Positions 1,547-55,500 of a stretch of 64,000 nucleotides of DNA are shown here, piece by piece. A program made the translations under genes and the position numbers. How positions within the stretch are numbered: position 1 is the stretch's first letter; the number at the start of each line of letters is the position of its first letter. Origin of the DNA: Lepidodermella squamata. Lineage: Eukaryota > Animalia > Gastrotricha. The notes under the pieces were generated by a model, which was not told where the DNA came from, ran no database searches, and saw nothing but the letters and a program-made list of their open reading frames with translations. The DNA lies in NCBI GenBank assembly GCA_047495785.1, contig JBLDXI010000040.1:186001-250000 (forward strand), read 5' to 3'.

Positions 1547-4664
<3,118 letters not shown>

Positions 4665-44727: not shown

Positions 44728-46094
44728 ATAATTTTAAGCGATTGCAACTGCGATTGTCATATTCCACTACAAGGGAAGAGACTTGTATAGGATTTCGCCC
44801 GGTTTAATTTATTCGTTGCACCCTAATTGCTCGCATAAATCATAATGCTCTAATGATGGCAGGAAAAAATCATACTTTTCTCCTTGCAATCATGGAAACA
44901 ATCGCTTCTTTAGGTCATCACTATCGCCTTACCTTGTGAATAAACAATTCAGTTAAAGGATGACGTTTCGCTCTCGTACTAATTTTGATGAGGTGTATTT
45001 GGGTGTATATGTTGCAGTGTTTGGGATTTTATTGAGATTTGATTTAAAATTGTTTGATTTGATTTTTGCGCAAAGATTTGATTCAGCTTTTCAAAAATTT
45101 CGCCAATGATTTTGTTGTCCTCGAGTCTCAATTTAACACTGAAAACGATTCGACCATCCCTATTTTTCTATGTAAAAATGGTGACCGATATTCATTTGAA
45201 GCCAAGAATTTCGCCGGTTTTCAACTCAATACAGTTGTCAATGCAAAATTGTCGCCTCATTTTCCAAAAACAATGTTGTTCAGCTTTTCGAGGTGGACAT
45301 ATTTAAGGGTAAATTCTTTCAAGATTTTAAAAGATTCGCCATGGTGTCATGGGCAGTTTATGGATGCCTGTGCTCAATGGCGCATACCTGTGGACTACTC
45401 GTATCTGATCTCAGCCATTTAGCTAGGATATGCCGTATACCCAGAACTGGAACTTGGAAAATTAATTCCAATCAATCCAAACAATCGGCCAGCTTTCGAT
45501 GAAATCGAAGAGAGCTCAGGCAGCATTGAATCCCAGAAATCGCAACAGGGCATCGATTGCGACATTGAAAGCAGGAAGATACAGAACAACGATACAGATG
45601 TTTCGAGCGATTCCTGACACCATGGCAAATAGCAGCCTTTCGTTCAAGAACGGATTTCGTCAATCCAGTTTTTCGTCGACTTTGAAAGCGCTCTGCTAAC
45701 TGAGGTGTTGAAGGGTCTTTTGACAGTTTGACAGCCATGCGAAGCCACCCGAGCAGAACCATCTTGCGTCCTACAGCCCAATTTTGCGATTCAGTAGCAG
45801 CAATTTGTTGAGCATGCGAGAAATGCGGGAAATTCGATGTGAAAAACAAACCAAAAACTCGCTAAGTGAAGAATGCGAGAACCATAGAGAATAGAGTTAC
45901 CTATTCTCTATCTATGATCTCCAGAAATTTTTACGAATGACGAGACAACATTTTATTGGACAAATTAATGAAAAATTCAGGTAGGACAGACATTTCATTT
46001 GCCAAAAATATGATTAAGCTGCTTCCGATAATAGTTCATGGTCGATCTCAGAGGGATGTCGAGAAATTATTTTCGAACTTTTTTTTTAATATTT

Positions 46095-47835
46095 TCATAA
46101 TTTAGTAGGCTCCGCGCCAGTTTCTGCCTTGATAAGAGCCGAAACGGGTAGAATTCCAGCCTCTAAGCAATCAGCCAGCGACAAATAGCCAACAGTTTCA
46201 GCCTGTTCGTTGATAACAAACGCGCCTCGTAGGCCGTGAGCCGACATTTTGACCACCGCATCCATAACATGTTCAGTTTCAAACAGTACACAATAGCCTA
46301 GGGTCAAGGCGCTACTACGGCCGAGCGAATTCGCTTGAATGAGCGCTTCATCCACGGTTAGATCGAGGCAATTCGATTTAGCGAGTAGGCGAATGTCGGC
46401 GTCGGTTATTGCGTCGATCAATTGACCCTGGTCGTTAATTACCCCGACGAGGCCAGCGTGGCTGTACAATAATTTCGGCATGGCTTCGGTTAATTTGCAT
46501 GACTGAAGGACTGTACATGGCAACCGAAGAGGATCCTGGAAAAAATCGAGAAATTCGTTAATATTTTCGATTAAAAAATTAACAAAATCGGTTATCGATC
46601 CAAAATTTATGAATTTCGATTTTTTATAGTTTGAAAATTAAATTTGAAATTTTGAAAAATTTAAACTTACAGTTGACATGATATCTTTAACGGGTCGGTG
46701 GCGCCACTTCGTGCGTTGAATGTGGTAGTCACGACTCGCCACGCCTCGCCTCGCTCGTTGGGTGCACACAGCGAGGGCGTCACCCAGGGCGGCCATGCAC
46801 TGGCTTGACGTAGTCGGAAAATTCGATAGCAAATGAGCCTCGGGTAAATCCGGAATTTCGAGCTAAAAATTCGAATAACGATTCAGCATAAAAACATTTT
46901 AATTATTAAATTTCAATTTTGATCTTTTAAAAATGCAATTTTTCAAAAAAAATCAATTTCACCGATTTTGACATTTTCAAAAAAAATCAGAAAATTTCAA
47001 AATTATTTTTAAAATTATTAAACTGAGTGAGTAAGTTTGAAACTTCAATAATTTAATATCATCATTTTTTAAATTTCTTGAACTTTCAAAATTCAAAATT
47101 TTCAACCAGTTGAAATTTTTTCAATTTTTCAAATTTTTGAGCTTACACAAATTTGCGCAAAATCGCCTAATTGGCTGCCTTTTTTAGCCGTAACAGCAAT
47201 TATCGCAACACCTAGCCGTTGAGCCCGTAAAAGCGCCGGTATCAATTCGGGGACTTCGCCACTCTGCGACAGCACAATAAAAGCGTCGCCCTGATTAATC
47301 GAGTCCAACTCGCCGTGGTAGCCTAGGTCGTCCGGGTGTAGGAAGAAGGCCGGCGAGCCTGTTTGAGCGAGAGCGGCGGCCAATTTTCGCTCGACATGGC
47401 CACCTTTCGACAAGCCGCTGACAATAATTCGACCTCGTAGGGTGAGTAAAACTTCACAGGCTTTGGCGAAGGAAGCGCCTAACAAAATTAAAAATTAAAA
47501 TTAAGGAGGACTTTTTAAATTGAAATTAAAATATATTAAGGTGGATTTTATTATGACCCAATTTTTTAGTAACCTATCATTGAGTTGGCCAAATGTCGCA
47601 AAGCTGCCGCTTCATCGTTGATAATGCGCCTCGCTTCACTGATTGCCGTGACGTGGTCAAGCGTGACGAGTCGCAAGGTTGGTTTCGGCGGTTTATTTGA
47701 CCTCGAAGCGGATGAAGAAGCGACCGATGATGAGTCATCAATGTATCTCAACCGATTGAGGCGTGAATTCAGCTGAAGCCAGTCAACCGAATCGAACAAC
47801 TGGCTAGCGATTTGATGCGGAAATTTATTCGCCAT
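46095..47835 (-). CDS. KdsD/GutQ/KpsF-family sugar-phosphate isomerase-like protein (SIS + CBS pair), 4 exons, divergent
   Basis: ARRIINDEAAALRHL..FAKACEVLL..GRIIVSGLSKGGHVERKLAA..TGSPAFFLHP..HGEL..LSQSGE..EAH..PTTSSQ..GDALAV..VKDIM..ITDADIR. Three GT-AG introns join in frame. Confidence 0.88.
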
Positions 47836-48357
47836 AATAACTACAATGAGCCGCGCGGAAAATATGATGCGCGTCCTCCGCCTAAGACTTTTGTTTATAA
47901 CGATGGTTTTTCGTGTTGTCAAGTGAAGAGGCTATCGCGACTTATATCAGGACAATAGGTGGTAAACATGGGTCATTAGTTGTATATGGCGATAAACACT
48001 CGCGCGTTCTCATTGACAAATATGATTGAGTAGCTGAGCGCGGATATTAGGTATCGCGTTACACCCCATAGGATTTGCACTTATTCCACCTTAAATAATA
48101 GAAAAATCGGGAGACTGTTGCAATCAAAGACGCGGGGCTGAAAATTGGGCACAAAACAGGTCAAAAACTCATCATTGGTTCAACAACGCCGCCTTAAAAT
48201 AAATGAGCTATAAAAATATTACCAATAATTATGGAAAATGCATAATAGCCGCACTCTAACGCAATAACCCGCATTTTGACACTTGCGCGCGCATAATATA
48301 ATATATTGCGCGCAATAATTTCAGCGCCTAATAAAATTTAGTGTGAAAATTGAATTG

Positions 48358-48700
48358 GCCAATCAGCGTGCGCGGTTAATGCGCGCGCGAACCAATCAGC
48401 GCGCTTAGAATTTTAGCGCAATAAAAATATGTAGCACAACTTAATGTGGTTGATTGAGCTATTAAATGTCATAATTTTAGAGTAAATCTGTCAAGTATTT
48501 GATTAATGGCGATTGAAACTAATCAAATTATGCAATATATCCATCAAATAAGCAATTAATCCATCAAATTTCGTGGCAGGTAGTCTTAAATGTCAGAAAA
48601 ACGTCGAAATTATGTCATAATGTCGAACAATTTGATGATTTAATTGCCCCAATTGAACTACGCAATGATTAATTGCGGTCAACCGCAGGGTATATAAAGG
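48358..48700 (+). promoter_or_regulatory. Candidate promoter: two CCAAT boxes and a TATA box
   Basis: ccaatcagcg at about 48359 and 48392; gtatataaaggg at about 48690. May drive the 49932 gene through a 5' UTR intron (donor about 48803, acceptor tttcag 49908). Confidence 0.35.
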
Positions 48701-52598: not shown

Positions 52599-55500
52599 TC
52601 ACCGTTGTCTGGATACAATTAAAAATGTTGATAAATTTAGGAATGTGAATAAAATTAATCGAGGCGAGTTTTGGCGATTCGCTCCGTTTGATATAATCAC
52701 CTTCTGACCGGAACGGTTTGAAGTCGAAGAGCCGCCATTCGGCTGGTCGGCATACCAAAATTGCACCTGGTCAGTTGAGTTTCCACTTGGAGCTGTAAAA
52801 TAAATATTTTAAAAATTCATAAAATTTGAATTATTAATTAAATTGATCAATAAAAAAACATAAATTGTTAAACTTTTTAAATTTAAATTAATTATTAATT
52901 TTTGAAAATTCTGTCGATTAATTTTTAAATTTTCAAAATTTTCAAATTTCAATTTTCAATTTTCAAAAAAAATGCGGGTCTCACCTGTATCATATCGGTA
53001 CGTCCTGCCAACTGCCCTGGCCTGGCTGCCACCAGACTGGCCCGAATCTTGAACCAACGGCATGGCTTGCCACAAAGTCGAACACGGCTCATCCGTACAT
53101 TTACAATCTTTCGCATTAACCGACCCACCCCGCTGCAGTAAAATCGAAACAACCCGCGGTTTTCGCTCACAAATCGCCCAATTTATCGCCGTCCGCTTGT
53201 AGTAGCTATCCTTGGCGTGAATATTAGCCTTCCGGTCTAATAAAACCCCGACAACAGCCGGCCTGTCCCAACGAGCTGCGACAATGAGGGCAGGTTGGGT
53301 GTAGCCGTAATCCGGGTAGGACTCCTCAGAATTCACGTCGAGTTTACCATCATCAATTAACAGCCTAACAACACTCGATAAATCAGCCCGAATCGCGTTG
53401 AATAACGCTGATTTGCCAACATTTCTATTCAAGGTCGCGAGAGGGCATGACGTCATTTGACCTGTTAGCAGCTTTAAAATGACGTAATCTGGGTCAGAGC
53501 AATTAGCGGTTGGGTCGTTCGGCGGCGTGAATAGCGAGCTATTTGATGTTTTATTAGGCGACTGGTCGTAAATTTGAGCGATTATTTCGCTGTCGATGAA
53601 AGGCAATTGCGTGGTGTATGACGCTGGTGGCCGCGCCGATGATCGCGCCCATGAACCAGTTTTATTAGCCCATTCGTCCATAACGGATCGAATCCAAGGT
53701 AAACCAGCGCAAATTCTTAATTAAAGAAAAAAATCAGTGAACGGCTGTTTTATTTTTTCCATAAAAATCAGGAATATTTTAATCAATTTTTTAAATTCAT
53801 GAATAAATTAGTAAAAATCGTAAAATTATGAAAACATGGAATTTGAATTTTTGGAAATTTTTCAAAATTTTCAAAATTTTATTGAACAAAATGAAAATTC
53901 TAATTTAATTTCAACTCTCTCAATTTCAAATTTTAATTCAATTTTTTTGAATTTCGAGATTTTTGAAGATTCATTGAATTTTTTCTCAATTTCAAAATAT
54001 CAATACTTCACCTGGAATAAACAGCCGGCTTGGTTCCCGTTGTGTCATTGCAGTTAATATTGCCATAAGACGTGATTCCAATGATGAAAGGCTTCGTTTT
54101 GCTATAACAAGCCAGTGGGCCCCCAGAGTCACCCCGGCACGTCTGCTCACCCGCCCTGCCTCGGGCGCACATCTTCGCCTGGCTGAAGTAGTCTTTAACG
54201 AAGGTCCGGCTGCAGATTGAAAACGGGATGAAGCTGAGTGTGACTTTTTTAAGGTTGTACGACATGTAATCGGCGGGCCCTGGGCGGCCCCATCCGGTTG
54301 CGATGGCCTCGGAGCAGCCGTCGATTTCATCGTCGTAGTCGGAGTAGGAACCATCCGGCATACAGCTATCGGGACCGGGCAGGTCGACGGGGGAAATCGT
54401 TCGAGATCGACGAACAGGCGATTTTAAACGGATTCTAAATTAAATTAAAATTTCAAAAAATTCAAAAGTAAATTCAAAATTCTCTACAATTTTAGAAAAA
54501 ATCAGAAATTTTAAAATAAATTTGAATTAAATAAATTAGCTGAAAATAAGACAATTCTCAAATTTCAAAATTCCAATTTTTCAATACGAAATTTAAAATT
54601 TCAATTTTTAAGAAAACTAACAAAGCAAAATCGTGATCGGTATTGGCGCCAGCGTAAAAATCTGGGTGAACGTAAATATCGGCCGATGACGCTGCTCGGT
54701 ACTCTTCACCCGCCTCGCCGGGTACGGATAGGTCGTGTTTGCCCAGGTAGGCGCGCACGCTGTCCGCCTTGTTTCTTCCGGTTGAGACGCAATGAGCGGC
54801 TGTAATAATCCACTGCTCGTCGATAAGCGTGGCGCCGCATGAAAATGTGTCCGTATTAGGAATATCGGTATAAAGTCGAACCTGGATTTTTTTTATAAAA
54901 TTGAACAAAAAACAACTGCATAAAAAACTGCAATAAAAACAGCAATAAAAAATAAACAGGATTTCCGGTATGAAAAAAATACAAAATTCAGGCCTGTAAA
55001 CTTGCGGCTGAACCATTGGGGTTTCGGGCTTTTTGGTAAATTACCATAAGACGTGATCCAACTGATAAATGGCTTCCCTTTACTACAACAAAGTTCCCAA
55101 CTAAATGATAAATTCAGGTAAAAATAAGCGGCGAGGTTTGAAATTCATGAGGCCTTTGAATATGCAAATGAGCGAATCTCTGATTTATTAAATTTATATT
55201 GTAAAAAATCCGGTAAATTCGGGAAAATTAAAAAAAATCAGAGAAAAGCGGAAATTTTTAATTGTCTTTTGTTGAATTTTTGAGCAAATTTTCAGCCTTG
55301 AATCTTCAAACAAATCATCAATATTGGATTTATATTTTAAAATATTCAGAACTTTGAAATTTCAAGGCTTCCAAAAAATTCAGAAAAATTCAGAAAATTA
55401 TTTTAAAATGTTCTAAAAATTGGAAATTTGATTTTAAGATGCTTACCATCCACGGAAATTCGTGTTTTTGAGCAAAAGATCCGCCGAATACAAGCCAGCC

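What the first reader, a model, noticed from the sequence alone, without database searches (positions are those of the whole stretch)
46095..47835. Bacterial-type KdsD/GutQ gene with spliceosomal introns in an animal-type locus: candidate domesticated horizontal transfer
Seen: a full SIS+CBS architecture with three host-style AT-rich introns and a Ser-rich N-terminal extension of about 60 aa, flanked by animal genes, so contamination is unlikely. Known: arabinose-5-phosphate isomerase feeds Kdo synthesis in Gram-negative bacteria and plants, and animals are not known to make Kdo. Compared with E. coli KdsD as I recall it, the Lys of GKSG, the His of HGD and the Glu of SGE and EAC are kept. GKSG has become SKGG, and the catalytic-His HPGG loop is replaced (RDYHIQRTKW). 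Inference: a transferred gene repurposed, for example as a sugar-phosphate or adenylate sensor, or as an isomerase with a new substrate.
Basis: partly seen in the sequence, partly recalled or inferred. Interest (0 to 1): 0.75.

Follow-up and report, generated by a model that had tools for sequence, protein, structure and literature searches.

The report
Altered bacterial-type sugar isomerase gene in animal
A small invertebrate carries a real, spliced and selectively maintained gene of the bacterial KdsD/KpsF sugar-phosphate isomerase family whose catalytic loop and substrate-site residues have been rewritten, and the same rewritten form is kept in a second animal, so it probably senses or regulates rather than makes the bacterial sugar precursor.

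Summary
A four-exon minus-strand gene (47835 to 46095) encodes about 408 aa: an N-terminal extension, a SIS domain and a CBS pair of KpsF/GutQ/KdsD type. Its three GT..AG introns have GC 0.19-0.20 and match the host's intron style. The flanks hold animal-type genes.

An RNA-like run covers only exons 2-4 and joins intron 2 exactly. All variable sites in exon 4 are synonymous.

In 1.84 billion representative proteins, the only relatives closer than bacteria are four genes on metagenome contigs of an unidentified animal. All share one intron position and phase with the window gene.

Per-exon trees put the five animal genes in one clade (100/100) among alphaproteobacteria-like KdsD. The clade splits into three canonical genes (GKSG, EAC, HPGG intact) and an altered pair: the window gene and L087.

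The altered pair shares KGGHVERK, a shortened [ST]KW loop in place of HPGG, and an N-terminal YIDD/Ser-rich motif. Its CBS pair is better conserved than in the canonical genes.

Best reading: an old bacterial acquisition was duplicated, and this copy belongs to a conserved, probably non-isomerase, ligand-sensing or regulatory subfamily.

The scan noted the same kind of altered copy before, on another piece of this genome (s1-374181).

The parts
47574..47835 (-). Exon 1: ATG at 47835, 87 codons plus 1 nt (phase 1). It encodes the N-terminal extension and the first KdsD helix (ISEARRIINDEAAALRHLANSMI).
   Evidence: BLASTP to the N-terminus of the altered orthologue P0007 gives E 4e-14. It aligns to the bacterial N-terminal helix. 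The RNA-like run X3 gave no coverage here.
47734..47772 (-). Conserved motif of the extension, LNSRLNRLRYIDD, followed by a Ser-rich stretch. It is shared only with the altered orthologue (LNSKFNNFQYIDD).
47479..47573 (-). Intron 1: 95 nt, GTTACT..TTAG, GC 0.19. It is absent from all four relatives.
47147..47478 (-). Exon 2: the core of the SIS domain.
   Evidence: Pfam SIS 4e-14. GutQ 1.4e-24. 2XHZ 2.7e-19. X3 contigs cover it.
47396..47416 (-). GLSKGGH, where bacteria and the canonical animal copies have G[ML]GKSGH. The catalytic Lys is kept, but the flanking Gly and Ser, invariant in bacteria, are changed.
   Evidence: The altered orthologue has GTTKGGH followed by the same VERK.
46863..47146 (-). 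Intron 2: 284 nt, GTAAGC..TTTTAG, phase 0. It is the ancestral intron, at the same place and phase as the single intron of all four metagenomic animal homologues.
   Evidence: An X3 contig joins 46862 to 47147.
46671..46862 (-). Exon 3: the last part of the SIS domain, the linker loop and the first strand of CBS1.
   Evidence: X3 covers it.
46692..46733 (-). Remodelled loop RDYHIQRTKWRHRP in place of (D)F..HPGG.(L/I)G.., 3-4 residues shorter. The [ST]KW core and the length are shared with the altered orthologue (EFYRKHDSKWSTKT).
46536..46670 (-). Intron 3: 135 nt, GTAAGT..CCAG, GC 0.20. It is absent from the relatives.
   Evidence: X3 depth is zero here.
46095..46535 (-). Exon 4 with the stop codon: the CBS pair (Bateman module) and a short C-terminal tail.
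   Evidence: Pfam CBS 2e-8. AlphaFold model pLDDT 86 and pTM 0.78. CBS-pair matches at Z 13-15, including the arabinose-5-phosphate isomerase CBS pairs 4o9k, 3k2v and 3fna. 53% identity to L087. All variable sites are synonymous.

Best explanation
What it is: a functional gene of a KdsD/KpsF-type family (SIS domain plus CBS pair). An ancestor of this invertebrate most likely took the family from a bacterium, with alphaproteobacteria-like affinity in the sampled trees.

Order of events, inferred from shared features: the gene gained an intron and then duplicated, and the window's lineage later diverged from that of a second animal.
- One daughter lineage kept the full isomerase signature (GKSG, EAC, HPGG).
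- The window gene belongs to the other lineage.

What changed in the window's lineage:
- The residues around the catalytic Lys, the ASTG stretch and the EAC motif were rewritten.
- The His-Pro-Gly-Gly loop was rewritten. In KdsD this loop supplies a catalytic His to the neighbouring subunit (recalled, not read here).
- The loop was shortened to a conserved [ST]KW form.
- The CBS pair, with both ribose-binding-type motifs (ITDAD, LSLAD), and a new N-terminal YIDD/Ser-rich motif were kept under stronger constraint.

How it most likely works (inferred, not shown): the protein no longer interconverts ribulose-5-phosphate and arabinose-5-phosphate. It keeps the SIS scaffold and acts as a ligand-binding or regulatory protein through its CBS pair. 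It may assemble with the canonical paralogues, which earlier notes of the scan report elsewhere in this genome.
For: Real gene:
- Intact spliced frame, with GT..AG introns of GC 0.19-0.20 like a neighbouring host intron, and host-like GC3.
- Run X3 covers exons 2-4 only and joins 46862 to 47147.
- All 10 variable sites in exon 4 (11 observed variants) are synonymous.
- Against the L087 orthologue, pS is saturated (0.78-0.93) while pN is 0.30-0.39.

Family and origin:
- NCBIfam and Pfam hits.
- An exhaustive search of representatives found only P0001-3 and P0007 above or beside the bacterial level.
- The word search with P0003 found no annotated eukaryotic relative.
- The five animal genes form one clade at 100/100 in both exon blocks. 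They sit on the alphaproteobacteria-like side of the bacterial split, at 96-99/85-97.
- They share the intron position and phase and a 13-aa insert between the two CBS domains.

Altered subfamily:
- The window and L087 pair at 100/92 and 97/84.
- They share KGGHVERK, an RRG insert, the [ST]KW loop and the N-terminal motif.

Loss of isomerase features:
- Columns invariant in 77 bacterial sequences and kept by the canonical animal genes are changed only in the altered genes.
- L087 has also lost the H88 equivalent.

Mosaic of evolutionary rates:
- In the SIS block the window branch is 1.75, against 0.2-0.36 for canonical genes.
- In the CBS block it is 1.09, against 2.9-3.5.

The CBS pair folds confidently.
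Against: - Four of the five residues I recall as catalytic in E. coli KdsD (K59, H88, E111, E152) are still present in the window copy, so some catalysis is not excluded.
- The roles of those residues are recalled. The paper, Gourlay et al. 2010, is cited in PMC5362203 but could not be read.
- The RNA status of run X3 is only a guess, its depth is about 4, and it does not cover exon 1.
- No ligand, oligomer or activity was tested.
- The canonical paralogues in this genome are known only from earlier AI notes and were not seen here.
- The trees use 110-117 columns. The L087 SIS branch is very long (4.4), so its pairing with the window in that block could be inflated.
- No plant or protist isomerases were in the trees.
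Confidence: 0.6

Rival explanations
1. It is still a sugar-phosphate isomerase. It would act either on arabinose-5-phosphate and ribulose-5-phosphate with a rebuilt active-site loop, or on a new phosphosugar.
For: - The K59, H88, E111 and E152 equivalents and the SxSGE and GDALA motifs are kept in the window copy.
- The rebuilt loop is conserved rather than random, and the gene is under purifying selection.
Against: - The HPGG motif, invariant in 77 of 77 bacterial sequences, is gone, and so are the invariant Gly and Ser beside the catalytic Lys, the ASTG Ser and the EAC Cys.
- The L087 orthologue has also lost the H88 equivalent and the TGSPAFF stretch, so the subfamily as a whole does not conserve the isomerase site.
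- The SIS exon evolves 5-8 times faster than in the canonical copies.
Confidence: 0.25
2. The family was not acquired from bacteria by an animal. It would be an old eukaryotic gene, for example of organellar origin as in plants, kept in this lineage and lost in almost all other animals.
For: - The alphaproteobacteria-like affinity is also what an ancient endosymbiotic origin would give.
- The long stem and the shared intron show that the gene is old in this lineage.
- No plant or protist sequences were available for the trees.
Against: - No annotated animal or other eukaryotic protein scored above bacterial ones in either search.
- The SIS exon is still 45-51% identical to proteobacterial KdsD, against 51-54% to the animal canonical copies.
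- Many independent losses would be needed.
Confidence: 0.1
3. It is a decaying pseudogene or a bacterial contaminant.
For: The active-site motifs are eroded. Exon 1 has no read support in X3.
Against: - There is an open frame across four exons with canonical splice sites, and exon-only coverage with an exact splice joint.
- Only synonymous differences were seen.
- The orthologue keeps the same derived motifs after synonymous saturation.
- Host-style introns and animal genes lie on both sides in a 64-kb contiguous window.
Confidence: 0.03

Closest known systems
Bacterial arabinose-5-phosphate isomerases KdsD, GutQ and KpsF (NCBIfam TIGR00393, NF008141, NF008581; structures 2XHZ, 3ETN, 5UQI; CBS pairs 3FNA, 3K2V, 4O9K)
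   Same: - The architecture is the same: N-terminal helix, SIS domain, CBS pair.
- The SIS exon is 45-51% identical to proteobacterial members.
- The K59, H88, E111 and E152 equivalents are kept.
- The CBS pair superposes on isomerase CBS pairs at Z 13-14.
   Different: - It is an animal gene with three introns and a 50-55 aa N-terminal extension carrying its own conserved motif.
- GKSG has become SKGG, ASTG has become AQTG, and EAC has become EAH.
- The HPGG loop is replaced by a shorter [ST]KW loop, and there is a 13-aa insert between CBS1 and CBS2.
- The per-exon scores add up to well below the family's curated cut-off. The whole protein was not scanned.
Canonical animal KdsD-like genes on metagenome contigs L001-L006 (P0001-P0003 with P0281-P0283), and the copies reported by earlier scan notes s1-410364 and s1-387844
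   Same: They share the intron position and phase, the VPEL and INxGD motifs, the insert between the CBS domains and an N-terminal extension. They form one clade with the window gene at 100/100.
   Different: They keep GKSG, EAC and NHPGGNIGRR and evolve slowly in the SIS domain. Their CBS motifs are degenerate. The window gene shows the opposite pattern.
Altered orthologue on metagenome contigs L087-L090 (P0007/P0160), and the altered copy noted by the scan on another piece of this genome (s1-374181)
   Same: It shares KGGHVERK, the RRG insert, the [ST]KW loop of the same length, the N-terminal LNS..YIDD motif and the intron position. Its CBS pair is 53% identical.
   Different: - L087 has one intron, not three.
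- Its SIS domain is more eroded: the H88 equivalent and TGSPAFF are lost.
- It keeps a His at the old catalytic-His column, where the window has Arg or Gln.
CBS-pair nucleotide sensors (AMPK gamma / Snf4 Bateman domains, IMPDH CBS pairs)
   Same: The exon 4 model gives its best structural matches here (2nyc Z 14.8, 2uv4 Z 13.3). Both G-h-h-[ST]-x-x-D-type motifs are present.
   Different: There is no sequence kinship beyond the shared fold (about 20% identity). The ligand is unknown. A shared fold does not show function.

Membership tests
KpsF/GutQ/KdsD sugar-phosphate isomerase family (TIGR00393) | SIS domain followed by a CBS pair | tested here: met
   Pfam SIS 4e-14 in exon 2 and CBS 2e-8 in exon 4. 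The exon 4 model is a Bateman module.
KpsF/GutQ/KdsD sugar-phosphate isomerase family (TIGR00393) | Whole-protein score at or above the curated cut-off (203.7 bits) | tested here: inconclusive
Only the exons could be scanned, giving 75, 15.2 and 25.7 bits. The simple sum is below the cut-off.
KpsF/GutQ/KdsD sugar-phosphate isomerase family (TIGR00393) | Phylogenetic placement among family members | tested here: met
   The exon 2 and exon 4 pieces fall with the other animal genes inside a sample of bacterial KdsD/KpsF.
Catalytically competent arabinose-5-phosphate isomerase (EC 5.3.1.13) | Catalytic residues K59, H88, E111 and E152 (E. coli numbering; roles recalled from Gourlay et al. 2010, not read here) | tested here: met
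   All four equivalents are present in the window copy.
Catalytically competent arabinose-5-phosphate isomerase (EC 5.3.1.13) | The His of the HPGG loop (H193), and the loop itself, invariant in 77 of 77 sampled bacterial sequences | tested here: not met
   H, P and G are replaced by R, T and W, and the loop is 3-4 residues shorter.
Catalytically competent arabinose-5-phosphate isomerase (EC 5.3.1.13) | Invariant G-K-S-G, A-S-T-G and E-A-C motifs lining the site | tested here: not met
   The changes are G58S, S60G, T70A, S73Q and G92D in 2XHZ numbering, plus EAC to EAH.
Catalytically competent arabinose-5-phosphate isomerase (EC 5.3.1.13) | Isomerase activity | not testable with these tools
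   This needs an enzyme assay or complementation.
Horizontally acquired bacterial gene domesticated in an animal | Integrated in an animal chromosome, with spliceosomal introns and host-like composition | tested here: met
Horizontally acquired bacterial gene domesticated in an animal | Nested among bacterial sequences and absent from other animals | tested here: inconclusive
   No annotated animal homologue appeared in the searches. The clade sits on one side of a supported bacterial split. However, the trees are unrooted and lack plant and protist isomerases.
Horizontally acquired bacterial gene domesticated in an animal | Expressed and under purifying selection | tested here: met
   There is exon-only coverage and an exact intron 2 joint in X3, whose RNA status is a guess. 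All 10 variable sites in exon 4 are synonymous. pN is far below the saturated pS.
Pseudoenzyme paralogue (non-catalytic member kept beside active paralogues) | Active-type paralogues coexist in the same organism | tested here: inconclusive
   In the metagenomes, the canonical and altered genes occur in the same four assemblies. For the window's genome this rests only on earlier notes s1-410364 and s1-387844, which were not checked.

The most novel reading that the evidence does not exclude
The altered subfamily would be a dedicated regulatory subunit. It would keep the SIS tetramer interface and a nucleotide- or nucleotide-sugar-binding CBS pair, assemble with the canonical animal isomerase paralogues, and gate arabinose-5-phosphate production. 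That would imply that this animal lineage runs an undescribed arabinose-5-phosphate-dependent pathway, for example a Kdo-like or D-arabinose-derived glycan.
Probability: 0.15. Interest if true: 0.8.

Novelty: new variant of a known kind. Interest (0 to 1): 0.55.

Why it matters
Animals are not known to make Kdo or to need arabinose-5-phosphate isomerase, and I found no paper describing this family in animals.

In this lineage a bacterial-type isomerase family has been kept for a long time, has gained introns, and has split in two. One branch looks enzymatic. The other keeps the scaffold and the CBS sensor but has rewritten the catalytic site in a conserved way.

That makes it a clean natural case of a transferred enzyme turning into a probable pseudoenzyme or sensor. 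It also raises a direct question: what does an animal do with arabinose-5-phosphate?

Both questions can be tested with ordinary expression, assay and knock-down experiments.

Tried and rejected
- A scan of JGI metagenome contigs with the CBS-block profile found no relative.
- A profile word search for C-terminal halves returned only the three already known.
- phmmer of exon 3 against PDB sequences found nothing.
- No synteny was found. tblastx of the relatives' contigs against the window matched only the gene itself and generic ankyrin repeats.
- Rfam and tRNA scans of the window found nothing that could place the host.
- The host's phylum stayed unknown. The run names are coded. The Atlas gave only animal-type PAPS synthase clusters. 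The relatives' guanylate cyclase has no close annotated kin, with 48% identity as the best match.
- Alternative frames across the replaced loop do not encode HPGG, so a recent frameshift does not explain it.
- The papers on the KdsD active site could not be opened. Residue roles are therefore recalled, and I used conservation in 77 bacterial sequences as the objective measure instead.
- The scan's notes contain no mention of kdsA, kdsB or Kdo-8-phosphate genes. This is not evidence that they are absent.
- A look-up of the scan's notes by sequence was blank.

Full report
**Observation**

Reading the minus strand and checking it by script gives a four-exon gene:
- Exon 1: 47835-47574.
- Exon 2: 47478-47147.
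- Exon 3: 46862-46671.
- Exon 4: 46535-46098, with the stop at 46097-46095.

The introns are 95, 284 and 135 nt. They start GTTACT, GTAAGC and GTAAGT, and all end in AG. Intron GC is 0.19-0.20, against 0.49-0.57 in the exons.

Scanned exon by exon:
- Pfam finds SIS in exon 2 (4e-14) and CBS in exon 4 (2e-8).
- NCBIfam finds GutQ (1.4e-24), KdsD (4e-23) and KpsF (7e-21) for exon 2. Exons 3 and 4 give weaker hits that line up in order along the same models.

The surroundings are animal-type: Sushi, trypsin, ankyrin, an M28 peptidase and a PAPS-synthase-like exon. A neighbouring trypsin gene has an intron of GC 0.16-0.24 with the same AT-rich word style. GC3 of the four exons (0.49-0.59) lies in the range of host exons (0.41-0.56).

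Contamination is excluded.

**Is the gene alive?**

Four public runs were laid on 45900-48000.
- X1 holds the locus. It also shows a second haplotype.
- X3 is labelled RNA only as a guess, and its depth is about 4. It covers exons 2, 3 and 4, with zero depth in all three introns.
- One X3 contig joins 46862 to 47147, which is exactly intron 2, with one base difference next to the joint.
- Exon 1 has no X3 coverage.

All 10 variable sites in exon 4 (11 observed variants, from the second haplotype in X1 and from run X2, a 95-99% relative) are synonymous. Two of them fall in one codon and are synonymous in combination.

**Relatives**

The exhaustive HMMER search of 1.84 billion representatives with exon 2 found 5092 hits. 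The best reached only 55% identity.
- The top three (P0001-P0003) and P0007 are fragments from ENA metagenome assemblies.
- Each of the four has an N-terminal extension.
- Each stops a few residues after the end of the exon 2 equivalent. This is the signature of a prokaryote-style gene call running into an intron.

Their contigs (L001-L006, L087-L090) carry animal-type genes: a Cys-loop receptor ligand-binding domain, ankyrin proteins and a receptor guanylate cyclase. The guanylate cyclase's best named relatives are hemichordate and bivalve receptors at 48% identity. The carrier is therefore an animal without close annotated kin.

Further searches added nothing closer:
- A word search with P0003 found, after these fragments, only bacterial KpsF/GutQ proteins, many of them alphaproteobacterial. 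It found no annotated eukaryote.
- A profile of the C-terminal halves found only the three matching second halves.
- A scan of JGI metagenomes found nothing.

I found no paper describing this family in animals.

**Shared derived characters**

- All four metagenomic genes have a single intron. It lies at exactly the place and phase of the window's intron 2, before L[LE]IP[DN].
- All five genes share a roughly 13-residue insert between CBS1 and CBS2. They also have VPEL/AELL after SG[ED]; INxGD is seen in the window and the canonical genes only. All five have an N-terminal extension.
- The intron therefore predates the split of all five genes. Introns 1 and 3 are specific to the window's lineage.

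**Trees**

I built maximum-likelihood trees for the exon 2 columns and the exon 4 columns. The other rows were 77 bacterial sequences (under 70% identical to one another) and the relatives' pieces.

- Both blocks place the animal rows in one clade, at 100/100 and 100/99.
- With L087 added, the support is 100/100 in both blocks.
- The clade lies on the side of a supported bacterial split (96/85 to 99/97) that holds the alphaproteobacteria-like sequences (Terasakiella and Rhodospirillaceae-type). It lies away from the gamma- and betaproteobacterial set.
- Inside the clade, the window pairs with L087, at 100/92 in the SIS block and 97/84 in the CBS block.

Caveats:
- The L087 SIS branch is very long (4.4), so that block alone could be inflated.
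- The CBS block has no such long branch, and the shared motifs agree with the pairing.
- The trees are short (110-117 columns), unrooted, and contain no plant or protist isomerase.

**Two subfamilies with opposite erosion**

I took the columns that are at least 93% conserved in the 77 bacterial sequences.

The canonical animal genes keep nearly all of the SIS columns, including GKSG, ASTG, EAC and HPGG.

The window has changed G58S, S60G, T70A, S73Q and G92D (2XHZ numbering). It has also changed EAC to EAH, LAPT to NFPT and H-P-G to R-T-W, with a 3-4 residue deletion.

L087 shares several of these features:
- the exact KGGHVERK stretch;
- the one-residue RRG insert;
- a loop of the same length with the same [ST]KW core.

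In addition, L087 has lost the H88 equivalent.

The CBS pair shows the reverse pattern. The window and L087 keep both G-h-h-[ST]-x-x-D-type motifs (ITDAD/LTDSD and LSLAD/LSLAE). Two of the three canonical genes have lost them.

Branch lengths say the same:
- SIS block: window 1.75, against 0.2-0.36 for canonical genes.
- CBS block: window 1.09, against 2.9-3.5.

Other comparisons of the window with L087:
- Identity is 44%, 46% and 53% in the exon 2, exon 3 and exon 4 parts.
- The N-terminal extension is conserved (LNS[RK][LF]N..YIDD plus a Ser-rich stretch, E 4e-14). This also supports exon 1 and the start codon.
- Synonymous sites are saturated (pS 0.78-0.93), while pN is 0.30-0.39.

**Structure**

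Exon 4 alone, modelled with a 28-row alignment, folds as a Bateman module (pLDDT 86, pTM 0.78). Its best PDB matches are:
- Snf4 and AMPK-gamma CBS pairs bound to AMP;
- the CBS pairs of arabinose-5-phosphate isomerases 4o9k, 3k2v and 3fna, at Z 13-15.

The title of 4o9k is cut off in the output. From memory its ligand is CMP-Kdo, which I did not verify.

**Interpretation**

Shown:
- It is a real, intron-bearing, selected gene of the KdsD/KpsF family in an animal.
- It belongs to an old animal clade with a shared intron.
- Within that clade it belongs to a conserved altered subfamily.

Inferred:
- The origin is bacterial. Direction was not tested against other eukaryotes.
- Isomerase function has been lost or changed. 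Residue roles are recalled from Gourlay et al. 2010, which is cited in PMC5362203 but could not be read.
- The protein has a ligand-sensing or regulatory role through the CBS pair, possibly together with canonical paralogues.

Earlier notes of this scan bear on this:
- s1-374181 reports the same kind of altered copy on another piece of this genome.
- s1-410364 and s1-387844 report canonical-looking copies.

I did not see those loci. My independent analysis of this locus agrees with the reading given for s1-374181.

**Left out**

- As a result, the whole-protein family cut-off, a full-length model and a full-length tree are missing.

Noticed in passing
window 48260-48420: About 450 bp upstream of the gene's ATG lies a GCGCGC-rich stretch. 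It has two near-identical CCAATCAGCG boxes (around 48358 and 48392) and several TTGCGCGC/GCGCGCAA palindromes. It could be a shared or divergent promoter.
   Followed up: no
window 46640-46674, 46938-47019, 47492-47526 (inside the three introns): Contigs of run X4 (organism D, same study as X1) match only short AT-rich words inside the introns, at high depth and partly. The introns seem to be built from a dispersed low-complexity repeat (TTGAAAATTT / AATTTTGAAA). The same repeat is seen in the neighbouring trypsin gene's intron (54400-54560).
   Followed up: partly
window 45961-46089 and 47877-47882: Run X1 holds a second haplotype at about 40% of the depth. It has many substitutions and small insertions in the 3' flank of the gene and a cluster of changes in the 5' flank. 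Inside exon 4 it differs only at synonymous sites.
   Followed up: partly
window 2129-3699 (minus strand): Exons of a PAPS-synthase-like gene (PUA_2 plus ATP-sulfurylase). The nearest Atlas clusters are animal-type, fused with APS kinase.
   Followed up: partly
L001-L006 and L087-L090 (ENA assemblies ERZ23486787, ERZ23486764, ERZ27333047, ERZ27332993): The same four metagenome assemblies hold three canonical KdsD-like genes (P0001, P0002, P0003; 60-79% identical to one another over the aligned half) and one altered gene (P0007). They lie on intron-poor contigs of GC 0.36-0.40 from an unidentified animal. Its receptor guanylate cyclase is at best 48% identical to any named protein.
   Followed up: partly
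P0101 (429 aa): A bacterial-looking representative has GKWG in place of GKSG and RPTG in place of HPGG. Erosion of the same two motifs may therefore also occur outside animals.
   Followed up: no
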